IMG/VR virus record: IMGVR_UViG_3300048121_001678
Location: 124,001-188,000 of that record
Length of the DNA: 64,000 nucleotides
Reading direction: 5' to 3' (one strand)
In this document: piece by piece, positions 12,066 through 58,683 of the stretch
Numbering within the stretch: the first letter of the stretch is position 1
Layout: every line of letters starts with the position of its first letter
The notes under the pieces: model-generated
What the model was told of the DNA's origin: nothing
The model's database searches: none
The model's input: the letters and a program-made list of their open reading frames with translations, nothing else
Program-made: the position numbers and the translations under genes

Positions 12066-13772
12066 TTATCCCTCACATGCAACACATTGTAAATCATTCA
12101 GCCCTAACTTCTTTCTTGAGAAAGCTTGAGCGGAATTCATTGAGTGTTGGTAGTATAATGTTTTAACCCCTAATTTCCAAGAATCAATAAGAAGTTTGTT
12201 AACATCTTTTGTTGGCATATCAGGTGACACCATTAAATTTAACGACTGTGATTGGTCAATATATGTTTGACGTACTGCCGCTTGATTGATAATTGATGAT
12301 TGGTTAATTTCCGCAAAAGTTCTAAATACATCTTTTTGTTCATCATTTAAAAAATCTAAATGTTGTACTGAACCATCTGCCTGTTTAATACTATTCCACA
12401 CTTCTTTAGTATCCTTATCCATAGTTACTAATAACTCTTTAAGAACAGGATTCTTAATTGTGACTTTCATCTTAGCAACATCCTTTACATAACAATTAGA
12501 CCATATGGGTTCGATTGATTGTGAAACCTGTCCAAGAATAAACGCCGATGAGGTTGTGGGTGCAACTGCGTTAAGCGTTACATTTCTTCTCCCATACCCT
12601 TTTAAGTATTCAGGTTCCCCAAACATTTCAGCTAATTGCTCCGATGCTTTATATGACTTTTCTTTGATGTTTTTAAATACCTCAACATTCAGTCTTGCCG
12701 TTTCTCTTGTATCGAAAGCCAATCCTTTAGATTGAAGTAATGAGTGCCATCCTAATACACCTAATCCTAGTGCTCTTTGTCTTTTAGAGAAGTTATATGC
12801 TTTCTCTAAGTAGAAGAACGCTCTTTTACCCTCAATTGTTCCGTTGTCTCTTAACTCTTCAATTTTCGTCAATAATTCAGTAACTACAGCATCTAAGAAC
12901 ATAGTCATCACTTCAACAGCGTCTGTGTCTTTCCACTCATCATAATGAAGAACATTCATTGATGATAAAACACAAACAAATGATTCTTCCTCTGAATTGT
13001 GTAACGCAATCTCAGAACAAAGATTTGAATTATTAATTGTCGCTCCTTTGTCTTTATAAACGTCAACAGTACCATTGTTCATTGTGTCATGGAACATAAT
13101 ATATGGATACCCAATCTCACCTCTTCTTTGAATTACCTTAGCCCATATTGCTCTCTTATCTTGGTCACCAGCAATCATATCATTCATAAACTCATCAGTT
13201 ACTGTAACTGCGTGTGTTAAATCTTGGATAGGGAACCCTTCTGTACCTATTTCTAAGAACTCCATAATATCTGGATGTTCAACAGGTAGGTATGGTGAGA
13301 AACGACCTCTTCTAGTCGAACCTTGTGATATATTATCTACAACACTCTCAAAAAGATTCATAAAGTGTACTGCACCTGGTGCCAATCCGTTATCTGTGAT
13401 TTCAGCACCACGTCCTCGGATATTACCGAAGTAACCTGAAGTACCTCCACCCATTTTAGACATTTCACCAACCTCAGCTTGCGTATATAAAATTGATTCA
13501 ATATTATCACCAATATTAGAACCAAAACAACTTACAGGTAAACCTCTCTTTTTTCCGAAGTTTGCCCATACAGGTGATGATAGGGAATACCAACCCTTAC
13601 CCATATAGTCATAAAATTTATCAGCAAAACCTTCTATACCTAAAAGTTTTTCTGCGTGGTTAGCGATTGTTCTAATCCTTTCTAATGGTTCCTCTCCCTC
13701 ACTTAGATATCCTCTACGTAGGAAGGTAATTGATTCTTCATTAATCCAATCAAATGGTTTTTTATTATTCAT
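12066..13772 (-). CDS. nrdA: Class I ribonucleotide reductase alpha subunit, short form without ATP-cone
   Basis: PVSCF, SNLCSEI (catalytic N/C/E), APTTSS, KTLYY and the C-terminal CVAC redox pair; 568 aa. Confidence 0.95.
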   Translation of the reverse strand: MNNKKPFDWINEESITFLRRGYLSEGEEPLERIRTIANHAEKLLGIEGFADKFYDYMGKGWYSLSSPVWANFGKKRGLPVSCFGSNIGDNIESILYTQAEVGEMSKMGGGTSGYFGNIRGRGAEITDNGLAPGAVHFMNLFESVVDNISQGSTRRGRFSPYLPVEHPDIMEFLEIGTEGFPIQDLTHAVTVTDEFMNDMIAGDQDKRAIWAKVIQRRGEIGYPYIMFHDTMNNGTVDVYKDKGATINNSNLCSEIALHNSEEESFVCVLSSMNVLHYDEWKDTDAVEVMTMFLDAVVTELLTKIEELRDNGTIEGKRAFFYLEKAYNFSKRQRALGLGVLGWHSLLQSKGLAFDTRETARLNVEVFKNIKEKSYKASEQLAEMFGEPEYLKGYGRRNVTLNAVAPTTSSAFILGQVSQSIEPIWSNCYVKDVAKMKVTIKNPVLKELLVTMDKDTKEVWNSIKQADGSVQHLDFLNDEQKDVFRTFAEINQSSIINQAAVRQTYIDQSQSLNLMVSPDMPTKDVNKLLIDSWKLGVKTLYYQHSMNSAQAFSRKKLGLNDLQCVACEG

Positions 13773-13791
13773 TGTATTTTTAATTTTTTTG

Positions 13792-15054
13792 TTAAAATAA
13801 ATCGTTAGATGTAATTGATTTCGACTTCTTACTGTAGTTAATACTTCTCTTATTAAAGAAATCTGTGTGTTTTGTAGTTAATATCTCATCATCAAACCAC
13901 TCTGTAGTTTCCAACAAAGATTCGTTAACTTCGAAGATACCATCTACACCAATAGAGTTTAATGATACATTAAATCTATGTTTAATAAATTCCATAGTTT
14001 GGTTTTTAGTTAAGAAATCTAAATCTCCCTCCTCAAAAATCCATTCTACGATTTCTGACTCCGCCTCATATGCTTCCATAGTTGCAACAATTAAGTCTTC
14101 TTTTAGTTCGTCTGTCCACCAACTTGGGTTTTCATTTTTAATTAAGTTTACCAAATCAAAACCAAATCCAGCATGTATGTTTTCTTCTTTTGATGTCGCT
14201 TCAACAGCGTTACTAATACCTTTCAACATATTCTTATGTTTATTGAATGACATAATAACTAAAAATTGTGAGAATAGTGACACATTCTCTACGAACATTG
14301 AGAATAGAACAACCGATTCGAAGTATTCCTTGTCTTCAACTGCCTTTGAATTTGTAATTGCTTTCTCTAAATACTTAATTCTTTTACGAATAGCAGGTAC
14401 TTGTAAAAGTGTTTCAAACTCATTATTTAATCCCAACAATTGTACTAAATGTGAGTAAGCATCAGCATGTCTCACCTCTGACTCTGCAAAAGTAGCACCA
14501 ACGTTACCAATCTCTGGTTTTGGCATTCTTTTGTATATGTCACCCCAAAATGATTTAACAGCAACCTCAATTTGTGAAATCGCCAACATTGCTCTTTTAA
14601 CTGCAGTTCTTTCTTTTTTGTCGAGATTCACTTTAAAGTCCTGAATATCAGAAGTAAAATTAAATTCTGTATGTACCCAATATGAGTGTCTAATAGCGTC
14701 AACATACTCATTAAGATTAGGGTACTCGTAAGGTTTTAAGTTCGTTCTTTTTGTAAAGATATTCGGACCATTATCCTTACGGTAAATGATGTATTCTTTT
14801 GCAACGTCATTTAGACCGTTATCCATAAGTTTATTCTCTACCATATCGTGTATTTCATCAACGTGAGGAACTCTATCTGGTTCCCCTCTGAAAATCCCTT
14901 TTCTCGTTATTCTTGCAATTTTTTCAGCCATATCATCATCAATATTACCGACACTCTTCATTGCTTTTAATACCGCATATTTTATTTTTTCGGACTGAAA
15001 CTCTACTTTCTCCCCGCTTCTTTTAATCACATAATTAGTTTCTTTACTGTTCAT
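13792..15054 (-). CDS. nrdB: Ribonucleotide reductase beta subunit with N-terminal ATP-cone (class Id-like)
   Basis: ATP-cone VIKRSG...EKIKYAV...VDEIHDMVENKLM...VAKEYIIYR; ferritin-like ligands QIEVAVK, ESEVRHADAY, VENVSLF, KEENIH. Confidence 0.92.
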   Translation of the reverse strand: MNSKETNYVIKRSGEKVEFQSEKIKYAVLKAMKSVGNIDDDMAEKIARITRKGIFRGEPDRVPHVDEIHDMVENKLMDNGLNDVAKEYIIYRKDNGPNIFTKRTNLKPYEYPNLNEYVDAIRHSYWVHTEFNFTSDIQDFKVNLDKKERTAVKRAMLAISQIEVAVKSFWGDIYKRMPKPEIGNVGATFAESEVRHADAYSHLVQLLGLNNEFETLLQVPAIRKRIKYLEKAITNSKAVEDKEYFESVVLFSMFVENVSLFSQFLVIMSFNKHKNMLKGISNAVEATSKEENIHAGFGFDLVNLIKNENPSWWTDELKEDLIVATMEAYEAESEIVEWIFEEGDLDFLTKNQTMEFIKHRFNVSLNSIGVDGIFEVNESLLETTEWFDDEILTTKHTDFFNKRSINYSKKSKSITSNDLF

Positions 15055-34231: not shown

Positions 34232-34259
34232 TTAAATTACTTTTATTATAAATACCTTA

Positions 34260-35747: not shown

Positions 35748-35865
35748 TGTATTTTAATTTTAATTGTTTTTTAGTTTATTACTTATAAATAGTTGAAGTC
35801 TTAAAATTTTTTCTATTTACTTTTAATCTTAATTTTCCATAATATATAAAAATATCTAGAAAATT

Positions 35866-40122: not shown

Positions 40123-40211
40123 GTTTTTTTAATTTCTTTTAGAATTTATTTTATTATAAATATTTAGAAAAAACGCAAAAAACTTTCACTGAGGGGACAT
40201 ATTTATAAATT

Positions 40212-40399: not shown

Positions 40400-41446
40400 T
40401 TATAGTAACTTTGCAGTTGTAAACATCTTTGATTCACCCGATGTGTTTTTAGTAACTACGAACCTTACTAAATCATTAGTATTAATTTGTACTTTGTTTT
40501 CGTCCTTATTTAGTTCACCGACATAGTCATTATTAATATAAACATCACAAGTTTTTATGTTTTCTGTTCTGTCTAAATATAAATCTATAGTGTATCTGAA
40601 AATTTCACTCAATTCGTCATTACCATCTACAAATAATAAATCAACAGGAAACTCATTTGGGTTCTCAGGTTGTGGGTCAACTTTTCTTGATTTATTTAGT
40701 AATGGTACTTCGTACATTGTAAGTGCTCTTGATATACCAGGGCTAACCTCAAACTCATCTTCATCCATTAAGAACCCTAACATTGTAAACTCGTAGTTTT
40801 GAATGTAGTATTTTCTTTTATCAATATCTAAAACAGATTCATCAGAAATGTTATTTAATACAATTGGTATATAGTGTCCTTTAATGTTAGTATATGCCTG
40901 ACGAGACGCAAAATTTTGAAGAACGTTTTTGTTGAACTCATTCAACGACCTCATTCTGTTTACAAACAGTTTAACATTATAAGTAATATCAACAGGAATA
41001 GGTTGAGGAATTTTATAGACATCGACACCTTTTCTTTGTCCGTCCCAAGTTGGTACTTTAGCATAATAAAATTGTTTTCTATTTGGAATTGTATATTGTA
41101 ATGATGGGTTAGAACCATAAGGAACTTCAGGTTGTCTAACTGTAGACACAAAAGGGGGTTTTACATTCTTATCTAAATCTTGAAAGTTCCAAGTCTCAGT
41201 AAACTGTGCCCAATTCTGTGTTGTTATAATAATATCAACAGTAGGTATAACCTTACCATCCATAAATGTTTTTAAATCATTTTTAACAAAATCCAACATA
41301 CCACGGTCTAAATCCGCGTGACCAATACCTTTCGGCAAATAAGTACCATCCCTTTGAATATCCTCCAAAAGTTCTATCCTTCTATCTAAACCTGTTTTTT
41401 TAGGTATAAGATTAATCGTTTTCTTTATTTTTTTTGGTAATGCCAT
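40400..41446 (-). CDS. Tail terminator / sheath stabilizer (T4 gp15-like)
   Basis: DLDRGMLDFV, PQPIPVDITYNVKLF, YEFTMLGFL; lies between neck and sheath genes. Confidence 0.65.
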   Translation of the reverse strand: MALPKKIKKTINLIPKKTGLDRRIELLEDIQRDGTYLPKGIGHADLDRGMLDFVKNDLKTFMDGKVIPTVDIIITTQNWAQFTETWNFQDLDKNVKPPFVSTVRQPEVPYGSNPSLQYTIPNRKQFYYAKVPTWDGQRKGVDVYKIPQPIPVDITYNVKLFVNRMRSLNEFNKNVLQNFASRQAYTNIKGHYIPIVLNNISDESVLDIDKRKYYIQNYEFTMLGFLMDEDEFEVSPGISRALTMYEVPLLNKSRKVDPQPENPNEFPVDLLFVDGNDELSEIFRYTIDLYLDRTENIKTCDVYINNDYVGELNKDENKVQINTNDLVRFVVTKNTSGESKMFTTAKLL

Positions 41447-41961
41447 TATACTCCGTTGAATTCATCATTTGATACCGGCGACGCAGTGATACTGCGGTAA
41501 TATGGTTTATAACCACCATAAGTGTGCCTGTTATCCGAGGTGATACGTCCGTCATCAACAACGGAATAATACCTAACTCTATCTTCTTTTTCATAATAAC
41601 CAATATAGTCTCCGAACTCAACATCTACATCCATCTCATCTAAATAAGACTGATAAATACCAACCTTGAGATTACCAGGTTCTAATTGTTCAATTCTTGA
41701 AGACCCCATATACGCATTTGTCGGTGCTTCAACCTGAACATATCCTTTGAGTTCCACAGGTGCGTGATATTGTACCCCTTCGGAGACCACCTCACCATAA
41801 ACATCATCTTTTTTTGTTCGTTGTTTATCAACACGATACAATACAAACGTAAAGTTCATATCCCCGTGTAACCATTCTTGGCCGAGAGATATGTCTAAAT
41901 CAAAATCTTCTTCTGCGAAGAATTTATTTAATCGTGTTATTGGAACTTTTCTTTGACTCAT
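41446..41961 (-). CDS. Neck / head-closure protein (T4 gp14-like)
   Basis: LYRVD...DDVYGE, GDYIGY...YYSVV. Start moved to ATG 41961 (MSQRKVP), 5 nt after TATTTATC; the track extension overlaps the SNF2 gene. Confidence 0.7.
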   Translation of the reverse strand: MSQRKVPITRLNKFFAEEDFDLDISLGQEWLHGDMNFTFVLYRVDKQRTKKDDVYGEVVSEGVQYHAPVELKGYVQVEAPTNAYMGSSRIEQLEPGNLKVGIYQSYLDEMDVDVEFGDYIGYYEKEDRVRYYSVVDDGRITSDNRHTYGGYKPYYRSITASPVSNDEFNGV

Positions 41962-42010
41962 CAATTGATAAATATCTATAAAATGATTATATTTAAATGT
42001 ATTTAAGTTT

Positions 42011-43765
42011 ATGCAAGAAAATAAAGTGGTATCAAAGATACCCGAAATTAAGGCAACACGTATTTTAGAAGAATACGAAGGGTACAACAATTATATACTT
42101 TTGTTGAAAAAAAAGATGCAAATAAAAAAGCATTTTAAAATGACCCGAGCACAGGCTGACTATATTATTGATTTTCATAAACGAACACCAAAAGTTGCAA
42201 GAAAGTGGGTTGAGTTAGATGAATACTTTGCTAATAAAATGAAAGAAGAAAAATTACTTTCTAAAAAACCAACTCAAATTTATGTTGAAAAAATATTGGT
42301 AGAGAAGGACAAATCATTTCATATTTATGGGAAATTATTTGAAACAGAGGAACTCCACGATTTTTGGTTACCCAAGGCAGCAGTAATACAAAATAAGGAA
42401 AGAAAGGTTGAGGTTGACTACACTAAATATTCAAACAGACCGCCACTAGAACATCAGAAACTTGCCGTCGAAAAACTAGTTGGTAACGATAAATACATTT
42501 TAGCAGATGACATGGGTCTTGGTAAGACGACCGCAACTGTAATGGCGGCATTAGAGTCAGGAGCAAAAAAAATATTAATCATATGTCCCGCATCTTTAAA
42601 AATCAATTGGCAAAGGGAAATTGAAAACTACACGGATAAGTCAATATCGATAGTAGAGGGTAAAAAATGGGAACCCGCCGATTTTATGATAATAAACTTC
42701 GACATATTAAAAAACTTTCACAACCTAAAAAAAATAAAAGAATCTGTTATCCTTAATTATGGTTTTGATTTAGTGGTAATAGATGAGGCACATTACATAC
42801 AAAACAAACAAGCACAGAGAACAAAAATAGCAAATGATATTTGTAAAAAGGTTGGTAAAGTATGGTTACTAACGGGAACACCAATGACCTCAAGACCAAT
42901 TAATTATTACAACCTACTGGACTTGGTCGACTCACCAGTCGCATATAATTGGATGGCATATGCAATTCGATATTGTGAGGGTTACCAATTTAGTGTGGGG
43001 AATAGAAGAGTGTGGAATGTTAATGGTGCATCAAATCTATTAGAACTTAGAGACAGAACAAAAACACACGTACTAAGAAGATTAAAAGAAGATATTTTAG
43101 ACTTACCTGAAAAAATATTAACACCTGTTTACCTCAGACTTAAATCTAAACAATACGAGGCAATGATGGGTGAATATTTTGAGTGGTATGATAATTCAGA
43201 GGAATCGTCCTCATTAACAGTGCAATTCTCAAAGCTGATGAAAGTAAGACAAATCATCGCAGAAGAAAAAGTTAGAAACACAATAGAAATTGCACAAAAC
43301 ATTATAGAACAAGGAAAAAAAGTTATTATTTTTACAAACTTTACAGATACATTAAATCAAATAAAAACTCATTTTGGTAAAGAGGCCGTCACTTTAGATG
43401 GACGAATGAGTAAACCTAACCGACAGCACTCCGTTGACGAGTTTCAAACAAACGACAAGGTCAAAGTATTTGTTGGTAATCTTAAAGCTGCGGGTGTTGG
43501 TATAACACTAACAGCCGCGGAAGCGGTTATCATGAACGACTTATCTTTTGTACCTTCGGACCATTCACAGGCCGAAGATAGGGCATATAGATATGGTCAA
43601 AAATCCAATGTGTCTGTCTTTTACCCAATTTTTGAAAATACTATTGAAGGTGCAATATATGATATCTTATCAAAAAAGAAAAATGTATTTGAAACAGTTA
43701 TGGGTGATAATGAAGATAAAGGGAATATTGTAGAAGAAATATTAAACTCAATCACAAGAAGATAG
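42011..43765 (+). CDS. SNF2-family helicase/ATPase (SMARCAL1/HARP-like)
   Basis: LADDMGLGKT, ICPASLKINW, DEAH, LTGTP, LRRLK, GVGITLT, QAEDRAYRYGQ. Confidence 0.93.
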   Translation: MQENKVVSKIPEIKATRILEEYEGYNNYILLLKKKMQIKKHFKMTRAQADYIIDFHKRTPKVARKWVELDEYFANKMKEEKLLSKKPTQIYVEKILVEKDKSFHIYGKLFETEELHDFWLPKAAVIQNKERKVEVDYTKYSNRPPLEHQKLAVEKLVGNDKYILADDMGLGKTTATVMAALESGAKKILIICPASLKINWQREIENYTDKSISIVEGKKWEPADFMIINFDILKNFHNLKKIKESVILNYGFDLVVIDEAHYIQNKQAQRTKIANDICKKVGKVWLLTGTPMTSRPINYYNLLDLVDSPVAYNWMAYAIRYCEGYQFSVGNRRVWNVNGASNLLELRDRTKTHVLRRLKEDILDLPEKILTPVYLRLKSKQYEAMMGEYFEWYDNSEESSSLTVQFSKLMKVRQIIAEEKVRNTIEIAQNIIEQGKKVIIFTNFTDTLNQIKTHFGKEAVTLDGRMSKPNRQHSVDEFQTNDKVKVFVGNLKAAGVGITLTAAEAVIMNDLSFVPSDHSQAEDRAYRYGQKSNVSVFYPIFENTIEGAIYDILSKKKNVFETVMGDNEDKGNIVEEILNSITRR

Positions 43766-43809
43766 TAATTTTTCCCATATGGTGTTATTTATAAATAAAA
43801 CACAGACTT

Positions 43810-45348
43810 ATGGAGTTTAAAAAGAGCCAGGAAAAAATCCGTGAAATAGAAAACAAAATTACGGAATCAGAAAGAAAAGATATCGTTACCGAGAATAAAA
43901 AAGGTAGTAAAATGATAACGGCAATAAAGTTACCATATTCATATTCGTCGTTAAAACGATTCATAGATAAAGAAACAATGAATGTTCATTATAACCAACA
44001 CTATAAAGGTTATATTAGAAAACTTAACAAAGCGTTAGAAAATGTTAAAGATAAAGACCTTGATTTAGAGTCTTTAATAAAGGGTGTTTCAAGATATAGT
44101 AATACCATCAAAAATAATGCTGGTGGGGCATATAATCATGAGTTATTTTGGCAGATGTTATCACCAAAACAACAACAACCAAATGGTCCAGTATTAGATA
44201 AAATTAAGAAGAAGTTTAAAACATTTTCAAATTTTAAGAAAACATTTAAAAACAAAGCTTTAGGTCAATTTGGTTCAGGATGGGTATGGTTAGTACTCAC
44301 AAAAAGTGGTGACGTTAAAATTGTAACTACATCTAATCAAGATAATCCGTTAATGAACACTATTAAATTTGGTGGAATACCATTATTAGGTTTAGATTTA
44401 TGGGAACACGCATATTACTTAAAATACAAAAATAAAAGAAACGAATATATTGATAATTTCTTTACAGTTATTAATTGGTCTTTTGTTAATAGACAATTTG
44501 ATTCACATCAAAAGGGTAAACTTAACGAATCAAAAGTTGTAAAGAGCTTAATTAGTGAGGGTTTATCTAAAGGATGTTCACCACAACAGGTAAACACATA
44601 TAGAATGGTCTTTAACAGAAATCCGCAAGTTAAGAAAAAGTTTATGTACGCAATTATGGATATACTTAAAGAAGTTTATTCTGAATTTCATTACGAAAAA
44701 AATCAATACGCAGATGGACAAATGTCAGGAATATACGATTTTGAACAACCTGGTCGTTCAGTAATTAATAAATTAAACACTAACTACTCCGCATTTTGTA
44801 TTTTAGTTAATGACCTTAATGCAGTATTAAAACACTACGGGCAGAATCCATTAAATTTTGTAGGTGTTAATGATAAACAACAGTTGAGGGAGGTACAAAG
44901 AATGATAAAACTTATGGTTGAATTCAGATATCGTATTTTTAATCAAGAATCAGGAACATTCCAAAGCATTATGGCGTCATTAGACAAAACAAATAAATTT
45001 GGTGATGAAAGGGAAATAAAGGCAGTTGTTAATATGAAAGATATCTTTAACACTAAAAAAGTATTCAAAGTAGGTGAACTAGGTGGGAAAGATGATATGA
45101 TTGGAGGTATTGATGCGACAGTAGAAATAAATGGCGAAACTAAAACAATACAAATAAAACCATTTAATAATACTGAAGAAAGTGAAGGTAGAGTCACTGT
45201 ATTTGGTACAGGTAATGTTAAACCCTATAAAACCGACTATATGTGTTTTCATGATAACTCTAAAGGTACGTTAGTTTTTGAAAATAATGATACAAAAATT
45301 GTTAACGGTAGATACACTTTCCCTATCGATAGTTTAATAAAACAATAA
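43810..45348 (+). CDS. Fe/Mn superoxide dismutase (Mn-type signature) fused to a C-terminal PD-(D/E)xK nuclease-like domain
   Basis: LPYSYSSL, HYNQH, NNAGGAYNHELFW, FGSGWVWL, NQDNP, DLWEHAYY (all four metal ligands); C-terminal GDERE...GIDA...IQIKP. Confidence 0.85.
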   Translation: MEFKKSQEKIREIENKITESERKDIVTENKKGSKMITAIKLPYSYSSLKRFIDKETMNVHYNQHYKGYIRKLNKALENVKDKDLDLESLIKGVSRYSNTIKNNAGGAYNHELFWQMLSPKQQQPNGPVLDKIKKKFKTFSNFKKTFKNKALGQFGSGWVWLVLTKSGDVKIVTTSNQDNPLMNTIKFGGIPLLGLDLWEHAYYLKYKNKRNEYIDNFFTVINWSFVNRQFDSHQKGKLNESKVVKSLISEGLSKGCSPQQVNTYRMVFNRNPQVKKKFMYAIMDILKEVYSEFHYEKNQYADGQMSGIYDFEQPGRSVINKLNTNYSAFCILVNDLNAVLKHYGQNPLNFVGVNDKQQLREVQRMIKLMVEFRYRIFNQESGTFQSIMASLDKTNKFGDEREIKAVVNMKDIFNTKKVFKVGELGGKDDMIGGIDATVEINGETKTIQIKPFNNTEESEGRVTVFGTGNVKPYKTDYMCFHDNSKGTLVFENNDTKIVNGRYTFPIDSLIKQ

Positions 45349-45387
45349 TAAACGGGTAAAGCCAGATATTTATAATAAAAGTTAACG

Positions 45388-46500
45388 ATGTCAATAATTT
45401 TAGAACCACAAAGAACCAAGCTATACACTAGAATTCGTCATCTTTTAGGTGCACCTTTAAGGGGTATTGAAATAGAAGATGAAATGATGGATTCATTATT
45501 GGAATTATCTATTGAAGATTACTCACAATATGTAAATGATTGGTTAATTGAATCACAATGGACATCACTATATGGTTTGAATCAGGATACTCAGTCCGTT
45601 GCCAAAGCATTAATAACACGTTCTTTAGATTGGGAAACACAGTACACTTACGCATATTCTAAAATTGTTGGTTTACAAGCGGGTGGTGATTCTGAATTAA
45701 AAAAGGACTATTTTGACCTTAAGGCTAACCAACAAATTTATGAAATACCTGCAGGTAGGGAAATAAATGAACTTTTATGGTTTACACGTGCCGAACTTGA
45801 TGCCGCTTTCTTTGACCCATTTATGGGTGGATTTGGTGGATTTGGTGGTATTGGTTTAGGTGGTGGTGCCGGTTTCTCACAAATGGGTGGTCAGGGCAAT
45901 TACTTTGTTTCACCAGGTTTTGACATCTTACTTAGAATGCAAGATATTAACATAAAAAGAAGACTTATAGGTGGAGAGCTAACTTATAGAATAACTGCAT
46001 TACCTGAGGGTAAAAAGGCTATACATCTTTATAATGTTCCTGGTGGTAAGTTTGATTTTGGTAACATGGCTAACAACAACTATAGAGTGTGGTATTGGTA
46101 TTATGAAACAGACGATAGAGAAAGTTGTTTAGCTAAAAATCCTGATATTGTTAGATTACCATCAGACGTTAATATGGAAAATTTAAATTGGGCGGAATTA
46201 AATTCACCCGCACAAACATGGGTTCGTAGATGGTTTACCGCATATGTTAAAGAGACACTGGGTCGAGTAAGAGGTAAATTTAGTGGTAACTTAAAAACAC
46301 CTGATTCAGAATTACAATTAGAATACGATTCTTTATTGAGTGAATCTAAAGATGAGAAGTCTAAACTAGAAGAAGAATTAAAAATGAGACTAGAAAGACT
46401 TCGTCCTGATAAAATGATGGAAGTTAAGGCCAATCAAGCAGAAAGTTTAAACAAATCACTACAATATAGAGCACTTCCTCGTCAAATCTATATAATATAA
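45388..46500 (+). CDS. Neck / head-tail adaptor protein (T4 gp13-like)
   Basis: LGAPLRGIEIEDEM, WVRRWFTAYVKETLGRVRGKFSG...P, LLSESKDEKSKLEEEL. Confidence 0.85.
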   Translation: MSIILEPQRTKLYTRIRHLLGAPLRGIEIEDEMMDSLLELSIEDYSQYVNDWLIESQWTSLYGLNQDTQSVAKALITRSLDWETQYTYAYSKIVGLQAGGDSELKKDYFDLKANQQIYEIPAGREINELLWFTRAELDAAFFDPFMGGFGGFGGIGLGGGAGFSQMGGQGNYFVSPGFDILLRMQDINIKRRLIGGELTYRITALPEGKKAIHLYNVPGGKFDFGNMANNNYRVWYWYYETDDRESCLAKNPDIVRLPSDVNMENLNWAELNSPAQTWVRRWFTAYVKETLGRVRGKFSGNLKTPDSELQLEYDSLLSESKDEKSKLEEELKMRLERLRPDKMMEVKANQAESLNKSLQYRALPRQIYII

Positions 46501-46832
46501 TGGGAATATTTAAATCATACCCCGTTACTAAAATAATAAATGGGGTTGAAATAAAAACTTCAGATGCAATAATATGTACTAACTCTAGTCATACCACAAA
46601 TGGGGAGTCTGCAATAATTGTTAAAAACACCGATAGTTGTGTGGTTACATTAAATGAAAATACAACAGACCACATAACAATTAAATCTATGACTAATGTT
46701 ACTATCAAAAGTGACTTACTCATTGATGATGAATATAATCAGATTGAAACTGAAAGAGGTGCGTCTGTTGAATTACGTTTCATCGGTAAAGGATGGTATA
46801 TAATGTCTTCTGATGGATTAAAAAACTCTTAA
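46500..46832 (+). CDS. Small beta-rich hypothetical protein
   Basis: Coupled to the gp13-like gene; ends GASVELRFIGKGWYIMS, similar to tail-fibre accessory modules. Confidence 0.6.
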   Translation: MGIFKSYPVTKIINGVEIKTSDAIICTNSSHTTNGESAIIVKNTDSCVVTLNENTTDHITIKSMTNVTIKSDLLIDDEYNQIETERGASVELRFIGKGWYIMSSDGLKNS

Positions 46833-49672
46833 CCAAATAGTGATTGTTGATTAGTTTCAATCTTCTTTTTAACTACTTTTCTCTTTTCTGCGATATAAGG
46901 TTTTTCTTCATTTCTAACATTCTCAACTTCAAGACCTAACATTATATCACTATTTTTCTTAATGTAATCACCATCAACAAGTTCCATTGTACCATCAACA
47001 TACATATAGTATGGGTCAATACCAACCTTCTGCCAAAATGTAATCTCAGTATCTGATAATGTTAAAACTTCTTCAAGAGTATCTTGGTCACCTTCTCTAC
47101 GAGGGAAACCACGAACTAATTTTGATTGTGTTTTAGTAAAGACAGGTCTATCTTTTGGGTCATCAATTAAAATATCGGGTCTAATGTCTGGTGAGAATAC
47201 AACTAAAAGTGGTTCGATTCTTTTATTAAATGCTGCTAAGTAACGTGCGACATTATATTCACCTAACATATCAGGACTTTCTGTGATATATTTTTCGTCA
47301 ATATGATAACAATTTAATACCACCTCATCTTTTTTCTTTTGTACGTCACCATGTGATTTTCTCTCACCATTATTTACGTAATATATGGTGTCACCTAAAC
47401 CGATGGGTAAATTGTGTTTCATTGCCAACTCCATATGTGCTTGACGAGACATTAATGAACCAGATTTAGTTCTTTTTGTAATGTGTTTTTTGTATTCTTC
47501 AATACTTTGTTTTACACGGGCTTTATTGGCTATTTTAGAAATAGGTATTTCTCTGTTGTATATGACCTCAACATATTCATAATAGTAATCTAAAAATTCA
47601 TGACCCTTACCGTCCAATAACATACGAAGACTTTTATCTAAAAATTCCGCCACATATGTTGGTAATTTTTTTGACTTAATTGTGTTACCTGTAAGTTTAA
47701 CTTTCCCCTTATCTGTTAATAGTGCGTAGTTCTTACGTGCCACATTTATAGTTGCTGGCCATTGACCATCAGTATCTAACCCCATTTCATTTCTCATAAA
47801 AAGGTCGTTATACTCGGCAACATCCGCTTCTGAACCATAATAGGTTTTACCTTTTTCAACTAAACCATTAAGACCAATACCAACATAACTATGATTTTCC
47901 TTACCTTCAGGAACTGAAAAGTTAACACCATCCGTATCCATGACTAATGGTTTATAATCCCTTTCCATGAACCACATAATCATCTGTCTTAAGTATTGTC
48001 GACCAGTACAGGTTATCTGCTCACCCATATCCATATCACCCCACGGAAATACATGAGGTGCAGATAGTGAACCAAAGAACGCATTAATAAAAATCTTAAT
48101 AGGTAATTGTTTACGGTTGTATTGTGAAGAAAGTTTAGGGTCTGTCTTTGAATAGTCAGCAGCTAATTTCTTATATTTAATACGAGTATCACGGAAATAC
48201 TTTAACATACTCTTCATTGCCCCTGTAACATCACATTTAGGGAACACATCATGAACTAATTGAATAGATGGGTATAGAGAGGAGTAATCGAGTTTTAATA
48301 CGTTTGTAGAGTAACCCACAGCTAATAGTCTCGATAGACCTCCCGTGAATGGTCTTTTCTCACCTTTCTTAGGTATTGCTAATCCGTGCTTGTATGACCA
48401 AGACGCCATAATCATTTTCCATAAAGTTGCAGTACCCATTGTTGATAGTCTCTCATATGTTGTTGGTACTAACTTTGCAAGAAGAAAGTTTGCTTGGTTA
48501 AACTCCTCATCAACCACCATGGTCTCCCAAATATCATCATAAAGATATCTTTCTACAATATACTTACCCGTTACCTTTTCATAATGACCAGGAAACTTAC
48601 CCATCAAGTTTTCAGTACCTTTTGAACCAACTTCTTTAAACCCACCTGTTTTTGGGTTAAAGTAGTAATCTTTATTGTCGAAATAAGTTTTACCAATCTT
48701 ATCACCCTGAACGTACACACGATTTTCTTTCCCAGCACCGATAAACTGAGTGATATATTTAAGTCCCCAACTCTTAATGTCAGAGTTAATTGCCTGTGCC
48801 CTACGTACCGCATGTGCAATATCAACAACATTATAACCCCACATTTGCATCTGAGTAAAATCTTCCATCTCATTTGCAAGTTTGAGTATACTATCTTTTT
48901 GTCTAAACTTAACTTCGGGATTTAAGGTCCTAATTATCTTTTTAGGGTCTAATCCTAATATTTCTGCTCTACGAATTAAAAACGGAAAATCGAAGAATGC
49001 CGAGTTATACCCACCAATTAGTGTTGGTTTTAATTGATTAACAATCTTAAAAAACTCAATAATAAGTTGTCTTTCTTCTTCATCGTTGTTGGCTGAGATA
49101 ACTTTTTCATATCCTTTATTGTCTTTCATACCAATAAGAAATATACTACTATCTTCAGGTGAAAGACCTGTGGTCTCAATATCGAATACAAATCTATGTA
49201 CCTCATCATATTCATCAAAACCTTTGAATAACCTCTTTCCCTTTTGACAGAGATATTGTTCAACAGGTGACATTATCATTATGTGTTCTGAATTACCCCT
49301 TTCCCATGGGTCTAAACCACCACCTTTAAAGAAGTTAACTAAGTTGGAGTAAGACTTCGTAGTCTTAACCATATATTTTAAACCTTTTTCCATTCTATCG
49401 TCACCATGAGTATCTAACTTTTCAATTAATATACCATGTGTTGACATTGCTTGTTTTTGTGCAGCTTTAGACCCACCATAAAACTTTTTACCGTGAAGGT
49501 CACCAACCCAAGCAAATGGAATAAATGTGTCTGATTTTATTTGTTTACCCTGAATCGGGTCTTGAATTACTTTAAATACTTTTCCTGAGCGATAGTCGTA
49601 TTCTAACGCAACAATGTACTTTTCAGGGTCTTCCCCTAATAGGAACTGTTCGATTACTTCTTGTGATACCAT
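46829..49672 (-). CDS. Family B DNA polymerase with 3'-5' exonuclease
   Basis: FDIETTG, GYNSAFFDFPFL, YLYDD, LDYSSLYPS, KIFINAFFG, MDTDG, KNYA. Confidence 0.95.
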   Translation of the reverse strand: MVSQEVIEQFLLGEDPEKYIVALEYDYRSGKVFKVIQDPIQGKQIKSDTFIPFAWVGDLHGKKFYGGSKAAQKQAMSTHGILIEKLDTHGDDRMEKGLKYMVKTTKSYSNLVNFFKGGGLDPWERGNSEHIMIMSPVEQYLCQKGKRLFKGFDEYDEVHRFVFDIETTGLSPEDSSIFLIGMKDNKGYEKVISANNDEEERQLIIEFFKIVNQLKPTLIGGYNSAFFDFPFLIRRAEILGLDPKKIIRTLNPEVKFRQKDSILKLANEMEDFTQMQMWGYNVVDIAHAVRRAQAINSDIKSWGLKYITQFIGAGKENRVYVQGDKIGKTYFDNKDYYFNPKTGGFKEVGSKGTENLMGKFPGHYEKVTGKYIVERYLYDDIWETMVVDEEFNQANFLLAKLVPTTYERLSTMGTATLWKMIMASWSYKHGLAIPKKGEKRPFTGGLSRLLAVGYSTNVLKLDYSSLYPSIQLVHDVFPKCDVTGAMKSMLKYFRDTRIKYKKLAADYSKTDPKLSSQYNRKQLPIKIFINAFFGSLSAPHVFPWGDMDMGEQITCTGRQYLRQMIMWFMERDYKPLVMDTDGVNFSVPEGKENHSYVGIGLNGLVEKGKTYYGSEADVAEYNDLFMRNEMGLDTDGQWPATINVARKNYALLTDKGKVKLTGNTIKSKKLPTYVAEFLDKSLRMLLDGKGHEFLDYYYEYVEVIYNREIPISKIANKARVKQSIEEYKKHITKRTKSGSLMSRQAHMELAMKHNLPIGLGDTIYYVNNGERKSHGDVQKKKDEVVLNCYHIDEKYITESPDMLGEYNVARYLAAFNKRIEPLLVVFSPDIRPDILIDDPKDRPVFTKTQSKLVRGFPRREGDQDTLEEVLTLSDTEITFWQKVGIDPYYMYVDGTMELVDGDYIKKNSDIMLGLEVENVRNEEKPYIAEKRKVVKKKIETNQQSLFG

Positions 49673-49807: not shown

Positions 49808-50161
49808 TTAAATAATATTGATATATAAATTTTCTCTGATTGGGGTAATGAGTTCACCCATTGAATTAATTATCGAGAATTCACCCAAAAAACGACCTTT
49901 TCTTTTAGTGTCCCTCAATAACCACTTATAATATATGTAGTATGTGATTGGGGCGTTAGGGTTGTCTTGTGTTTTTTCAGTTATAAACGCATTGTTCATA
50001 ATAATCTTTGGAATGCCAGTCGACTCTTCTTTCATTGAAAAACGGATTGTTGCGTTGTCTAAATCAGCGTCGAACAATTTCCAAGAATCTGTTCGACCAT
50101 CTCTTACAACTTCCATCTTTAAGATTGGTAACTCACTGTTTTGTTTTATAAAGAATTCCAT
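49808..50161 (-). CDS. Small BppU-N-like adaptor domain protein
   Basis: MEFFIKQNSELPILKM...ATIRFSM...YKW...DT...G.F.GEF; paralogous to the N-terminus of 53640..58664. Confidence 0.6.
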   Translation of the reverse strand: MEFFIKQNSELPILKMEVVRDGRTDSWKLFDADLDNATIRFSMKEESTGIPKIIMNNAFITEKTQDNPNAPITYYIYYKWLLRDTKRKGRFLGEFSIINSMGELITPIRENLYINII

Positions 50162-50180
50162 AATTATAAATATATCAATA

Positions 50181-50208
50181 AAGAAAAACCCCTCCGAAGA
50201 GGGGTTTT
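50181..50208 (-). terminator. Intrinsic terminator with a cUUCGg loop
   Basis: Minus strand AAAACCCCTC-TTCG-GAGGGG-TTTTTCTTT. Confidence 0.9.
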
Positions 50209-50231
50209 ATATTTTATAGGTTTTTAATTTA

Positions 50232-53200: not shown

Positions 53201-53585
53201 TTGAAGTGGATTGTGGAGTACTTGTTGGTGTTCTTGTTGGAGAAACCGTTTGAGTAATCGTTGCCGTCATCGTAGGTGTTACCGTAGATGTTATCGTTGC
53301 AGTGATAGATGGTGTTACCGATGGTGTATTTGACGGGGTAATTGTTGGGGTAACTGTCTGTGTTTGTGTTGGGGTTGGTGTTGGATGACCAATTACATAA
53401 GTGTAAGATGCTTCGTATGTTTCAGAATAGATTGTGTAGGTACCGTAAAAATAATCAGTAACTAAATCAGCCGGCATAGTAACAACACCAAAGTCCGTTA
53501 CAGTCGAACCTGTATCCGCAGTAAAAGTAATGTGAACACTTTCACCTACTAAATTATCACTCAAAAATCTAATTCCATCTGCCAT
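50232..53585 (-). CDS. Mucin-like Thr/Pro/Ser-rich surface or fibre protein with Cys-rich and C-terminal beta domains
   Basis: About 700 aa of TPT/TVTP/TSTP repeats, a Cys-rich globular region, a second TP linker and a beta-rich tip; two TATTTATA copies upstream. Confidence 0.75.
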
Positions 53586-53639
53586 TGTGTATAAATACTT
53601 TAATATATTATTTTATAAATAGTTTATCTTATGAGAATA

Positions 53640-58664: not shown

Positions 58665-58683
58665 AGACTATAAATACATTTAA

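What the first reader, a model, noticed from the sequence alone, without database searches (positions are those of the whole stretch)
43810..45348. Mn-type superoxide dismutase fused to a restriction-like nuclease domain
Seen: a 34-aa charged leader, a full SOD (43912 to about 44500) with intact His/His/Asp/His ligands and NAGG plus NQD Mn-type signatures, an LNE/ISE linker, a helical region, and a C-terminal E...GID...IQIK pattern. Known: phage SODs are mostly Cu/Zn type, and D...QxK is a PD-(D/E)xK variant. I know of no described SOD-nuclease fusion, but could not search. Inference: a polyprotein cleaved in the head, or a redox-coupled nuclease. The SOD is unusually Lys-rich and may bind DNA. 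It could also tune the superoxide that the phage's class Id-like RNR needs, making a phage Mn/superoxide circuit.
Basis: partly seen in the sequence, partly recalled or inferred. Interest (0 to 1): 0.8.

Follow-up and report, generated by a model that had tools for sequence, protein, structure and literature searches.

The report
Phage nuclease carrying an inserted superoxide dismutase
A common gene of uncultured large marine phages joins an intact manganese-type superoxide dismutase to a previously unnamed restriction-fold DNA nuclease; related phages carry the same gene with the dismutase split off or missing, which makes this unusual pairing easy to test.

Summary
ORF 43810-45348 (+, 512 aa) holds a conserved N-terminal helix, a complete Fe/Mn-family SOD with Mn-type signature residues, a flexible linker, a helical domain and a C-terminal core with an invariant E...D...D...QxK site.

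A confident AlphaFold model of the C-terminal 273 aa matches PD-(D/E)xK nucleases (I-Ssp6803I, archaeal Hjc, phage resolvases). No Pfam, PHROG, NCBIfam or PADLOC family covers it, so it is an unnamed family of at least 356 clusters, mostly stand-alone phage proteins of 240-300 aa.

The fusion is not an assembly artefact. At least 475 IMG/VR stretches encode relatives, the 80 best are all fused, and independent marine runs span both junctions.

The SOD is an accessory module inserted between an ancestral leader helix and the nuclease body. Sister lineages at the same locus (SNF2 helicase, this gene, gp13-like neck gene) lack it or encode it as a separate overlapping ORF, and an AU test rejects a single fused clade.

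The SOD domain is strongly cationic (pI 9.8, against 6.7 for its cellular relatives). The gene shares a promoter-like motif with tail and neck genes.

The phage also encodes a class Id (superoxide-activated) RNR.

The function, probably late DNA processing or virion cargo, is inferred and not shown.

The parts
43786..43797 (+). Promoter-like motif TATTTATAA(A)TA, 13-24 nt upstream of the ATG
   Evidence: The 9-mer is enriched in the window (12 found vs 4.6 +/- 1.9 expected; 0 of 100 shuffles reach 12). It lies 13-44 nt upstream of the sheath, tube, gp13-like, 600-aa and 1117-aa ORFs and of this gene, and upstream of none of 8 replication genes. The core TTATTTAT is conserved upstream of the gene in 48 of 53 distinct related loci.
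43810..45348 (+). Whole ORF, 512 aa: leader - SOD - linker - helical domain - nuclease core
43810..43878 (+). Conserved N-terminal amphipathic leader helix (residues 1-23), followed by a variable low-confidence linker (24-38, nt 43879-43923)
   Evidence: Helix 2-23 in the full-length model, with pLDDT below 50 for 17-33. The pattern M-x-F-K-K...(K/R)-I-x-E-(I/L)-E..I is conserved in fused proteins and also starts stand-alone members such as P0053 and the 294-aa group.
43924..44493 (+). Fe/Mn-family superoxide dismutase, Mn-type signature, strongly cationic
   Evidence: Pfam PF00081 and PF02777. PDB E 4e-56. NCBIfam SOD[Mn] 171 bits vs SOD[Fe] 159 bits, both below the equivalog cut-offs. Ligands H60 (43987), H110 (44137), D196 (44395), H200 (44407) are invariant. 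Lys 13.4%, net charge +15, pI 9.78, against 6.6%, -3 and 6.7 in 79 cellular relatives.
44512..44565 (+). Flexible linker (residues 235-252) with two conserved (L/I)-x-E sites: L238-N-E240 and I248-S-E250
   Evidence: pLDDT below 50 for 235-252. E240 is present in 45 of 45 and E250 in 44 of 45 fused proteins; position 238 is L/I in 42 of 45 and position 248 is I/L in 41 of 45.
44566..45048 (+). Helical domain of the ancestral body (residues 253-413), including the most conserved family motif G307-IYD..E..GRSVINKLNTNY..FC330 (nt 44728-44799)
   Evidence: Model pLDDT 85.5, helices as listed. Invariant columns. S317 and N320 are kept in at least 90% of 64 divergent members. No structural or family match of its own.
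44953..45345 (+). PD-(D/E)xK-type nuclease core (residues 382-512). Putative site: E402 (45013), D429 (45094), D435 (45112), Q448 (45151), K450 (45157)
   Evidence: Foldseek against PDB: I-Ssp6803I (E 2.6e-3, prob 0.99), Hjc resolvases, MGME1, tRNA-splicing endonuclease. BFVD: PD-(D/E)XK endonucleases and Holliday junction resolvases. ESM Atlas neighbours: RE_TaqI, RE_MjaI, Mrr_cat, Hjc. G398, D429, D435 and K450 are invariant, and E402 and Q448 are kept in at least 90% of 64 sequences with about 20-30% mean column identity.
42011..43765 (+). Upstream neighbour: SNF2-family helicase, conserved partner in synteny
   Evidence: Pfam SNF2-rel_dom and Helicase_C. PADLOC best hit ZorD, 'SWI2/SNF2 helicase, Mrr-like nuclease', E 2e-46. 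Adjacent in all related loci examined.
45388..46500 (+). Downstream neighbour: T4 gp13-like neck (head-tail adaptor) protein, with the same upstream motif
   Evidence: phrog_211 head-tail adaptor Ad2. PF26809 Phage_T4_gp13 on the orthologues. Motif.
12066..15054 (-). Class Id ribonucleotide reductase: NrdA 12066-13772, and NrdB with N-terminal ATP-cone 13792-15054. Relevant only to the superoxide hypothesis
   Evidence: Pfam. NrdB vs PDB: 5olk (L. blandensis ATP-cone NrdB) E 1e-157, then the F. johnsoniae class Id structures 6cwo/p/q. Found on the same contig, about 28-34 kb from the SOD gene, in 5 IMG/VR contigs.

Best explanation
Anatomy. The gene encodes a modular, probably bifunctional late protein of a lineage of uncultured large myoviruses that probably infect Bacteroidota. 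The ancestral unit is a widespread but unnamed phage protein. It has a short N-terminal amphipathic helix, a helical domain, and a PD-(D/E)xK (restriction-fold) nuclease core. That core would cut DNA by metal-ion catalysis through E402, D429, D435 and Q448-x-K450.

The SOD module. A complete Mn-type SOD of Bacteroidota-like origin was inserted between the helix and the body. It keeps every catalytic and second-shell residue and has become strongly cationic. It is an accessory: at the same locus, sister phages have no SOD, or encode leader+SOD and nuclease as two overlapping ORFs.

Most likely working (inferred, not shown). The protein is made late, together with tail and neck proteins. The nuclease processes phage DNA at the packaging or head-completion stage, a functional analogue of T4 gp49 or gp4. 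The basic SOD stays on or near the DNA and removes superoxide locally.

Possible processing (inferred). The conserved (L/I)xE sites in the two flexible linkers make it plausible that a T4-type prohead protease separates the modules, so that SOD and/or nuclease travel in the capsid.
For: Shown here:
- A real ORF and a real fusion.
- An intact SOD site under purifying selection.
- A confident model of the C-terminal body (pLDDT 85.5, pTM 0.76), whose only consistent structural neighbours are PD-(D/E)xK nucleases.
- Independent language-model neighbours: RE_TaqI, RE_MjaI, Mrr_cat, Hjc.
- The motif E...D...D...QxK is invariant or nearly so across 64 members at about 20% column identity.
- The family has 356 representatives at 50% identity, mostly stand-alone proteins of 240-300 aa.
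- The leader is shared by fused and stand-alone forms.
- The AU test rejects a single fused clade (p 0.001).
- A natural split form exists, leader+SOD next to nuclease, on 8 contigs.
- The synteny SNF2 - X - gp13-like holds in every close relative examined.
- The promoter-like 9-mer is shared with sheath, tube and neck genes and is absent from 8 replication genes.
- The SOD domain has pI 9.8 against 6.7 in cellular relatives, while the other window proteins average 5.7.
- The linkers are low-confidence in the model and carry the conserved (L/I)xE sites.

Precedents from the literature:
- T4 gp4 is a virion-associated restriction-fold nuclease needed for morphogenesis (PMC7824862).
- The PBCV-1 SOD is a late gene product packaged in the virion (PMC7019647).
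Against: - No enzymatic, expression or virion data exist.
- The fold matches are weak in absolute terms (best PDB E 2.6e-3, TM 0.3-0.47 on the target). After beta-3 the model is all-beta, not the canonical alpha-beta.
- No profile match to any named nuclease family, and none to T4 gp4 or gp2.
- Q replaces the usual acidic residue of (D/E)xK.
- The core TATTTAT of the promoter-like motif also precedes DnaB and the RecA-like gene, so 'late' rests on the extended 9-mer and on few genes.
- (L/I)xE motifs are common in Lys/Glu/Ile-rich sequence. I did not locate a prohead protease of this phage.
- In the split form the leader stays with the SOD and not the nuclease, which complicates a simple targeting-signal reading.
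- Neighbourhoods of distant family members are uninformative.
Confidence: 0.55

Rival explanations
1. Recombination or replication nuclease that works with the adjacent SNF2 helicase: a translocase plus a junction- or branch-cutting nuclease, like RuvAB-RuvC, Hel308-Hjc or the ZorD helicase-nuclease. The SOD would be merely a co-expressed auxiliary metabolic module with no virion role.
For: - SNF2 is the invariant upstream neighbour on the same strand.
- Its best defence-library match is ZorD, an SNF2 helicase fused to an Mrr-like nuclease.
- The Atlas lists helicase plus Mrr_cat_2 fusions among the structural neighbours.
- The closest solved folds include Hjc resolvases.
- The window encodes gp32-like, RecA-like, DnaB-like and FEN proteins but no recognised junction resolvase.
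- Iyer et al. propose that Snf2 helicases replace UvsW in jumbo-phage recombination (PMC7824862).
Against: - The gene has its own promoter-like motif shared with structural genes, and SNF2 lacks it.
- gp13-like is an equally constant neighbour.
- There is no profile similarity to Hjc.
- The extra 140-aa helical domain and the QxK site differ from known resolvases.
- This model does not explain the cationic SOD or the conserved leader.
Confidence: 0.3
2. Capsid-targeted cargo polyprotein. The leader acts like a T4 capsid-targeting sequence. A prohead protease cuts after E240/E250, and after a Glu in the first linker. Free cationic SOD and/or nuclease are then packed with the DNA and ejected into the next host, where the SOD quenches an early superoxide burst.
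For: - The N-terminal leader is conserved down to 39% identity.
- Two nearly invariant (L/I)-x-E-(S/G) sites lie in a linker with pLDDT below 50.
- All 45 fused SOD domains are basic (pI 9.5 +/- 0.2), as DNA-associated internal head proteins typically are (from memory).
- The motif is shared with structural genes, and the gene sits next to a neck gene.
- Natural split forms show that the modules can work as separate polypeptides.
- Virion-packaged late SODs are known in PBCV-1 (PMC7019647).
Against: - No virion proteomics, and no prohead protease identified.
- The T4 cleavage rule is recalled from memory, and such motifs are frequent in this composition.
- Stand-alone family members occur in varied, non-structural neighbourhoods.
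- Packaging an active nuclease next to the genome needs an explanation.
Confidence: 0.25
3. Mn/superoxide circuit with the phage's class Id RNR, or a redox-coupled nuclease. The SOD would tune the superoxide and Mn pool that the RNR needs, or gate the nuclease by redox state.
For: - NrdB is class Id with an ATP-cone (E 1e-157 to 5olk).
- Class Id beta is activated by Mn(II) plus free superoxide (PMC8463856).
- The SOD gene and the NrdB co-occur about 28-34 kb apart on 5 contigs.
- Tethering the SOD to DNA or to the capsid could keep it from quenching the RNR's oxidant.
Against: - SOD inhibits class Id cofactor assembly in vitro, so the simple relation is antagonism.
- The co-occurrence may be shared ancestry only.
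- SOD-less and split sister lineages exist, and their RNR class was not determined.
- No conserved Cys pair or other redox relay links the domains. C256 and C330 are invariant but lie in the helical domain, and nothing ties them to redox chemistry.
Confidence: 0.1
4. The C-terminal core is catalytically dead and serves as a DNA-binding or structural (neck or head-completion) domain that merely anchors the SOD.
For: - Gln stands in place of the canonical acidic residue.
- The fold similarity is weak, with an all-beta C-terminus.
- No named nuclease family matches.
Against: - E402, D429, D435 and K450 are invariant or nearly so across very divergent members, including all stand-alone forms. That pattern is typical of an active site.
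- QxK and relocated acidic residues are known variants among PD-(D/E)xK enzymes (established knowledge, from memory).
Confidence: 0.1
5. A free-standing homing endonuclease or other selfish nuclease (the best PDB match is I-Ssp6803I).
For: - Top Foldseek hit 2ost.
- One weak PDDEXK_5 hit.
- Presence of the SOD module is patchy.
Against: - The gene itself sits at a fixed syntenic position in all relatives, fused or not.
- It is a core gene that diverges with its genome.
- It is not associated with an intron or intein.
- It is twice the size of I-Ssp6803I.
Confidence: 0.03

Closest known systems
Bacterial Fe/Mn superoxide dismutases (Mn-type, e.g. solved structures 6gsc, 3tjt, 1d5n)
   Same: Both Pfam domains are present. 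The alignment is full length at about 45-53% identity. All four metal ligands, the gateway His/Tyr, the Mn-position Gln and the dimer-bridge Glu/Tyr are kept.
   Different: It is embedded inside a larger protein between a leader helix and a nuclease body. Net charge is +15 and pI 9.8 instead of about 6.7. It is found only on viral contigs, apart from one probably mis-binned MAG contig.
Minimal PD-(D/E)xK nucleases: archaeal Hjc resolvases, homing endonuclease I-Ssp6803I, phage Holliday junction resolvases
   Same: They are the best structural neighbours. The layout is shared: an acidic residue on the first helix, Asp at the start of beta-2, and x-K on beta-3.
   Different: No profile similarity. 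Gln replaces Glu/Asp in (D/E)xK, and there is an extra invariant Asp (D429). A 140-aa helical domain precedes the core and an all-beta extension follows it. TM-scores are only 0.3-0.47.
T4 gp4 head-completion nuclease (TnsA-like restriction fold, virion-associated; PMC7824862)
   Same: A restriction-fold nuclease of a T4-related myovirus, encoded among head-tail joining genes. This is a plausible functional analogy.
   Different: No detectable sequence relation (hhalign probability below 1%). The size and domain make-up differ. The role is inferred only from the neighbourhood and the promoter-like motif.
Virion-packaged viral SODs (PBCV-1 A245R, Megavirus chilensis; PMC7019647, PMC10583209)
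   Same: A virus-encoded, catalytically intact SOD, with the gene apparently co-regulated with structural genes.
   Different: Those are Cu/Zn SODs of eukaryotic giant viruses and stand alone. This one is Fe/Mn-family, in a bacteriophage, and covalently joined to a nuclease. Packaging is not shown here.
ZorD and other SNF2-helicase plus Mrr-like nuclease proteins of defence systems
   Same: An SNF2 translocase is paired with a PD-(D/E)xK nuclease. The window's SNF2 gene matches ZorD models at E 2e-46.
   Different: Here the two are separate adjacent genes of a phage. The nuclease module itself matches no PADLOC model.

Membership tests
Fe/Mn superoxide dismutase (Pfam PF00081 + PF02777) | Both domains score above Pfam's gathering thresholds | tested here: met
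   73.3 bits (cut-off 27) and 132.5 bits (cut-off 20.9). PDB E 4e-56.
Fe/Mn superoxide dismutase (Pfam PF00081 + PF02777) | His, His, Asp, His metal ligands plus second-shell His/Tyr/Gln and the dimer-bridge Glu/Tyr | tested here: met
   H60, H110, D196, H200, H64, Y68, Q177, E199 and Y203 are present and invariant in 45 homologues.
Fe/Mn superoxide dismutase (Pfam PF00081 + PF02777) | Superoxide dismutase activity and metal specificity (Mn vs Fe vs cambialistic) | not testable with these tools
   Only signature residues are available (Gly-Gly at 105-106, Gln at 177: the Mn pattern, from memory). NCBIfam SOD[Mn] 171 bits vs SOD[Fe] 159 bits, both below the equivalog cut-offs.
PD-(D/E)xK nuclease superfamily | Restriction-endonuclease-like core fold (helix, then three or more strands of a mixed sheet) | tested here: inconclusive
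   The model is confident (pLDDT 85.5). All consistent Foldseek hits are PD-(D/E)xK enzymes, but at E 2.6e-3 to 1 and TM 0.3-0.47. All Atlas neighbours belong to the same clan. The region after beta-3 is all-beta.
PD-(D/E)xK nuclease superfamily | Conserved catalytic residues: an acidic residue on helix 1, Asp before beta-2, and (D/E)-x-K on beta-3 | tested here: met
   E402, D435 and Q448-x-K450, plus D429. D429, D435 and K450 are invariant, and E402 and Q448 are kept in at least 90% of 64 divergent members. Gln instead of Asp/Glu makes this a variant of the motif.
PD-(D/E)xK nuclease superfamily | Significant profile match to a named member family | tested here: not met
   No hit in Pfam, PHROGs, NCBIfam, PADLOC or PDB profiles. 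There are only isolated weak hits: Mrr_cat_2 at 0.0045, RE_EcoO109I at 0.0045, PDDEXK_5 at 0.2.
PD-(D/E)xK nuclease superfamily | Metal-dependent nuclease activity | not testable with these tools
   Needs biochemistry.
Hjc-type Holliday junction resolvase (PF01870) | Profile match, a size of about 120-140 aa, and an E...D...ExK site | tested here: not met
   No PF01870 hit in any of 64 members. The module is 270 aa and has QxK.
Homing endonuclease of the I-Ssp6803I type (PDDEXK_5) | Mobile, patchily distributed gene, often in an intron, with a profile match | tested here: not met
   Fixed syntenic core gene. PDDEXK_5 appears at E 0.2 in one member only.
T4 gp4 head-completion nuclease / T4 gp2 end protector | Sequence homology | tested here: not met
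   hhalign probability 0.3% (gp4) and 0.1% (gp2).
T4-type capsid-targeted, protease-processed internal protein | N-terminal targeting peptide and (L/I)-x-E cleavage sites | tested here: inconclusive
   The leader and two (L/I)xE sites in flexible linkers are conserved. The rule is recalled from memory and such motifs are compositionally frequent.
T4-type capsid-targeted, protease-processed internal protein | A T4-like prohead protease in the same genome, and the protein present in virions | not tested
   Only 64 kb of the 297-kb contig was available, and no proteome data.

The most novel reading that the evidence does not exclude
The protein is a capsid-targeted cargo polyprotein. A prohead protease cuts at the conserved (L/I)xE linkers and releases a DNA-hugging MnSOD and a nuclease, which are packed with the genome and injected into the next host. 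This would be the first phage shown to deliver an antioxidant enzyme. It would also keep the SOD away from the free superoxide that the phage's own class Id ribonucleotide reductase needs during replication.
Probability: 0.2. Interest if true: 0.8.

Novelty: new variant of a known kind. Interest (0 to 1): 0.6.

Why it matters
Three reasons.

1. It defines a large, unnamed family of phage PD-(D/E)xK nucleases: at least 356 clusters at 50% identity, with no Pfam, PHROG, NCBIfam or PADLOC model. In one abundant aquatic phage lineage this is a fixed core gene between a helicase and a neck protein. Current pipelines call the fused form simply 'superoxide dismutase', which hides half of the protein.

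2. Nature supplies the controls. The same locus exists fully fused, with the leader split off, with the nuclease split off, and without the SOD. The question 'why tie a superoxide scavenger to a DNA nuclease?' can therefore be asked by comparison and by simple biochemistry.

3. The same phages carry a class Id RNR, which needs free superoxide and is inhibited by SOD in vitro. How one virus reconciles the two, by timing, localisation or packaging, is a concrete and testable question about reactive-oxygen management during infection of marine Bacteroidota.

Tried and rejected
- DNA and protein searches of 50,697 deposited phage records. There is no near-DNA match. Only the SOD half finds relatives, and the C-terminal half finds nothing even at E 1.
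- Family libraries for the C-terminal module (Pfam, PHROGs, NCBIfam, PADLOC), including every member of a 64-sequence alignment at E up to 5. No consistent family.
- Profile searches of PDB sequences with the whole module and with the nuclease core alone. Only chance-level hits.
- Homology to T4 gp4 or gp2: rejected.
- Assembly artefact: rejected.
- A single origin of the fused form: rejected by the AU test. The first tree was contaminated by truncated gene calls and by a regex miss, and was redone.
- Neighbourhoods of distant family members (P0204, P0187, P0205, P0129, P0206): too short or too varied to inform function.
- Other long architectures (576-1109 aa): their extra regions match nothing.
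- Atlas search with the helical sub-domain alone: scores of 0.64 or less, leads only.
- The generic sigma-70 promoter and terminator scan gave nothing above chance.
- A GIY-YIG reading of the 'GIYD...GRSV' motif was considered. I dropped it because no fold or profile support appeared.
- Literature searches found no description of an SOD-nuclease fusion. The library does not cover most subscription journals.
Full report
OBSERVATION. The ORF exists exactly as described: 43810..45348 on the + strand, ATG start, 512 aa. Pfam places Sod_Fe_N at residues 39-118 (E 2e-20) and Sod_Fe_C at 125-228 (E 6.5e-39). Nothing significant covers residues 240-512, and PHROGs gives nothing either. The SOD part aligns over its full length with solved Mn and cambialistic SODs (best E 4e-56). 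An alignment of 45 full-length homologues reaching down to 39% identity keeps H60, H110, D196 and H200. It also keeps H64, Y68, Q177, E199, Y203 and the Gly-Gly at 105-106. The leader, the LNE and ISE linker motifs and E402...G-I-D435...I-Q-I-K450 are all present.

IS THE FUSION REAL? Yes.
- A search of 5.8 billion proteins with residues 240-512 found 337 clusters, most of them 510-521 aa and carrying both SOD Pfam domains.
- IMG/VR holds at least 475 stretches that encode relatives. The 80 best (46-100% identity, contigs up to 322 kb) all have the SOD in frame.
- The window comes from IMGVR_UViG_3300048121_001678, 297,164 bp.
- At least 16 marine or seawater sequencing runs from different studies hold the stretch.
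- In a 2017 marine run one contig of 1,376 nt (31 substitutions, no indel, depth about 58) spans 43337-44712. That covers the helicase end, the leader, the SOD and the SOD-to-body linker. Contigs of two more runs tile both junctions.

WHAT THE C-TERMINAL HALF IS.
- An AlphaFold model of residues 240-512, built on 21 homologues, is confident (pLDDT 85.5, pTM 0.76). It shows a helical domain followed by a beta-rich core.
- Against the PDB, the only coherent set of Foldseek neighbours is small PD-(D/E)xK nucleases: I-Ssp6803I (E 2.6e-3, probability 0.99), several archaeal Hjc resolvases, MGME1 and tRNA-splicing endonuclease.
- Against viral models, after its own homologues come proteins named PD-(D/E)XK endonuclease, Holliday junction resolvase and restriction endonuclease.
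- The ESM Atlas, which uses a different principle, returns phage clusters carrying RE_TaqI, RE_MjaI, Mrr_cat and Hjc domains of similar length.
- A profile search of 1.84 billion representatives found 356 family members, mostly stand-alone proteins of 240-300 aa.
- Across 64 divergent members (mean column identity 20-30%), G398, D429, D435 and K450 are invariant, and E402 and Q448 are kept in at least 90%.
- In the model, E402 lies on the long helix, D435 at the start of a strand, and Q448-x-K450 on the next strand. That is the classical arrangement with Gln in place of the second acid.
- Caveats: the absolute fold scores are modest, the part after that strand is all-beta, and no named family is matched by profile in Pfam, PHROGs, NCBIfam, PADLOC or PDB sequences.
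- I therefore file it as a new, unnamed branch of the PD-(D/E)xK superfamily, at about 85% confidence for the fold class. Catalytic activity is inferred from the conservation pattern.

THE SOD IS AN INSERT, AND AN OPTIONAL ONE.
- The 'leader' is not a mere fusion artefact. Its pattern, M-x-F-K-K...(K/R)-I-x-E-(I/L)-E..I, is conserved among fused proteins and also opens stand-alone members such as P0053 and the 294-aa group. The ancestral protein was therefore leader + body, and the SOD with its two linkers sits between them.
- The full-length model shows well-folded modules joined by low-confidence segments at 17-33 and 235-252 (pTM 0.53).
- On a tree of the body rooted with distant stand-alone members, fused and SOD-less forms interleave. 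The 294-aa clade and P0053 nest inside well-supported fused groups. The AU test rejects a single fused clade (delta lnL 254, p 0.001).
- Two further natural states exist. In one abundant sub-lineage the leader is a separate 46-aa ORF, out of frame at a C5 run (L008), and 3 of the 80 IMG/VR loci look the same. In another, leader+SOD (248 aa) and the nuclease body (266 aa) are two ORFs overlapping by 29 nt, seen on 8 contigs from independent assemblies (L253, L254).
- These fused-versus-split states argue for a functional link between the two modules. They also show that each module can exist as its own polypeptide.

ORIGIN AND PECULIARITY OF THE SOD.
- Its nearest cellular relatives are almost all Bacteroidota (Chitinophagaceae, Crocinitomicaceae, Flavobacteriales, Saprospiraceae), at only 43-53% identity.
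- The one 73% hit lies on a 15,888-bp contig of a 'Polynucleobacter' MAG. That length equals the longest contig of the phage protein P0026, so it is probably a mis-binned phage contig.
The domain has 13.4% Lys, net charge +15 and pI 9.78. Seventy-nine cellular relatives average 6.6 +/- 2.3% Lys, net -3 +/- 5 and pI 6.7. All 45 fused phage SOD domains are basic (pI 9.5 +/- 0.2).
- Sixteen other proteins of the window average pI 5.7, so codon bias is not the cause.

CONTEXT.
- The window belongs to a large myovirus with no cultured relative. Its PolB is about 24% identical to that of Salinibacter phages, the best match in GenBank.
- It encodes a tail sheath, a tube, a T4-like baseplate hub, gp32-like, RecA-like, DnaB-like and FEN proteins, and an RNR.
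- In every close relative examined, fused or not, the order is: sheath (-) ... SNF2 helicase (+), this gene (+), gp13-like neck protein (+), a 110-aa ORF (+), PolB (-).
- Directly upstream of the ATG lies TTATTTATAAATAAAAC. The 9-mer TATTTATAA is enriched in the window (12 found vs 4.6 +/- 1.9 expected). It lies 13-44 nt upstream of the sheath, tube, gp13-like, 600-aa and 1117-aa ORFs and of this gene, but upstream of none of eight recognised replication genes, SNF2 included.
- Its core TTATTTAT is kept at the same place in 48 of 53 distinct related upstream regions, although the flanks have diverged.
- It contains TATAAATA, which I recall as the T4 late-promoter consensus. A shorter core also precedes DnaB and the RecA-like gene, so 'late gene' is a reasoned inference and not a result.

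MECHANISM.
- Shown: two intact catalytic modules, an ancestral nuclease body, an optional SOD, a fixed position between a helicase and a neck gene, a promoter-like motif shared with structural genes, and a cationic SOD.
- Inferred: the protein is made late; the nuclease processes phage DNA around packaging or head completion; the SOD stays close to DNA.
- The literature offers two precedents. T4-type phages need a virion-associated restriction-fold nuclease, gp4, for morphogenesis (PMC7824862); I found no sequence relation to gp4 or gp2, so this is analogy only. PBCV-1 packages a late-expressed SOD into its virion (PMC7019647).
- The linker between SOD and body carries K-(L/I)-N-E240-(S/T/G) and (I/L)-x-E250-(G/S). 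E240 is present in 45 of 45 and E250 in 44 of 45 fused proteins. These fit the (L/I)-x-E cleavage rule of the T4 prohead protease as I remember it. The stand-alone proteins keep the second site just after the leader.
- The main rival is a recombination nuclease partnered with the SNF2 helicase. That helicase's best defence-library match is ZorD, an SNF2 helicase fused to an Mrr-like nuclease, and the window lacks any recognised junction resolvase.

THE RNR IDEA.
- The NrdB at 13792-15054 (-) has an N-terminal ATP-cone. It matches the Leeuwenhoekiella blandensis class Id NrdB over its full length (5olk, E 1e-157), followed by the Flavobacterium johnsoniae class Id structures. This also supports a flavobacterial host.
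- Class Id beta is activated by Mn(II) and free superoxide, and SOD inhibits that assembly in vitro (PMC8463856).
- The two genes lie about 28-34 kb apart on five IMG/VR contigs.
SOD-less sister phages exist; their RNR class could not be checked with the flank limits.

NOVELTY. SODs and PD-(D/E)xK nucleases are both well known, and Fe/Mn SODs already occur in a few deposited phages. The fused sequences are in public databases under the name 'superoxide dismutase'. Four things appear to be new:
- the architecture (leader - SOD - helical domain - nuclease);
- the recognition of the body as a large unnamed nuclease family;
- the insert, loss and split series at one locus;
- the strongly basic SOD.
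Four literature searches found no description of this, within the limits of that library. I rate it a new variant of known kinds, of moderate to good interest (0.6).

Noticed in passing
window 12066-15054 (-): The phage encodes a class Id ribonucleotide reductase. Its NrdB carries an N-terminal ATP-cone and matches the Leeuwenhoekiella blandensis enzyme over its full length (5olk, E 1e-157). This points to a marine flavobacterial host. It also means the phage carries both a superoxide-dependent enzyme and a superoxide scavenger.
   Followed up: partly
L008:6880-7020 and 7001-8443 (also L058, L059, L064): In an abundant sub-lineage the leader helix is a separate 46-aa ORF, out of frame with the SOD-nuclease ORF. 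The frame change lies near a C5 run. The other frame reads on into the sequence seen in fused relatives. It could be a detached leader or a programmed frameshift.
   Followed up: partly
L253:5283-8693 (same in L254): A split form: a leader+SOD ORF (248 aa) overlaps a 266-aa nuclease ORF by 29 nt. In the same lineage an IS605-type TnpB (OrfB_IS605/Cas12f-like, 400 aa) and a small HNH gene are inserted between the nuclease and the gp13-like neck gene.
   Followed up: partly
window 34246-34254, 35783-35791, 40154-40162, 43786-43794, 45367-45375, 53613-53621: A conserved motif TATTTATAA(A/T)(T/A)AAA lies 13-44 nt upstream of tail, neck and large unknown ORFs. It resembles the T4 late promoter TATAAATA and may be this lineage's late promoter.
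   Followed up: partly
window 50000-58700 (-): Two giant ORFs (1117 aa, and 1674 aa with two C-terminal Laminin_G_3 stretches) lie in a region of 42-43% G+C with strong positive GC skew. The rest of the window is about 32% G+C. Three further giant ORFs (1736, 2159 and 1545 aa) have no Pfam match.
   Followed up: no
L173 (CAYVBV010000039.1, 15,888 bp, labelled uncultured Polynucleobacter MAG): This contig carries an SOD 73% identical to the phage's, while true cellular SODs reach at most 53%. Its length equals that of the longest contig of the phage protein P0026. It is probably a phage contig binned into a bacterial MAG.
   Followed up: no
window 46829-49672 (-): The family-B DNA polymerase is only about 24% identical to its best match among 50,697 deposited phage records (Salinibacter phages). 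No near-DNA match exists, so the lineage has no sequenced cultured relative.
   Followed up: partly
window 42011-43765 (+): The SNF2 helicase's best match in the defence library is ZorD (SWI2/SNF2 helicase with Mrr-like nuclease, E 2e-46), followed by DpdE, DrmD and BrxH. The upstream ORF 41446-42090 (-, TTG start) overlaps its first 80 nt, so one of the two starts is probably mis-assigned.
   Followed up: no
L010:8538-9686 (same in L011): In one fused sub-lineage an extra 382-aa ORF without any Pfam hit sits between the SOD-nuclease gene and the gp13-like gene.
   Followed up: no
P0205 (1109 aa; L006:6001-9330), P0268 (829 aa), P0201, P0239 and P0252 (576-597 aa): The nuclease module also occurs at the C-terminus of much longer phage proteins. 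Their N-terminal parts match nothing in Pfam or PHROGs. P0205 is followed by an M16 peptidase and a peptidoglycan-binding protein.
   Followed up: partly
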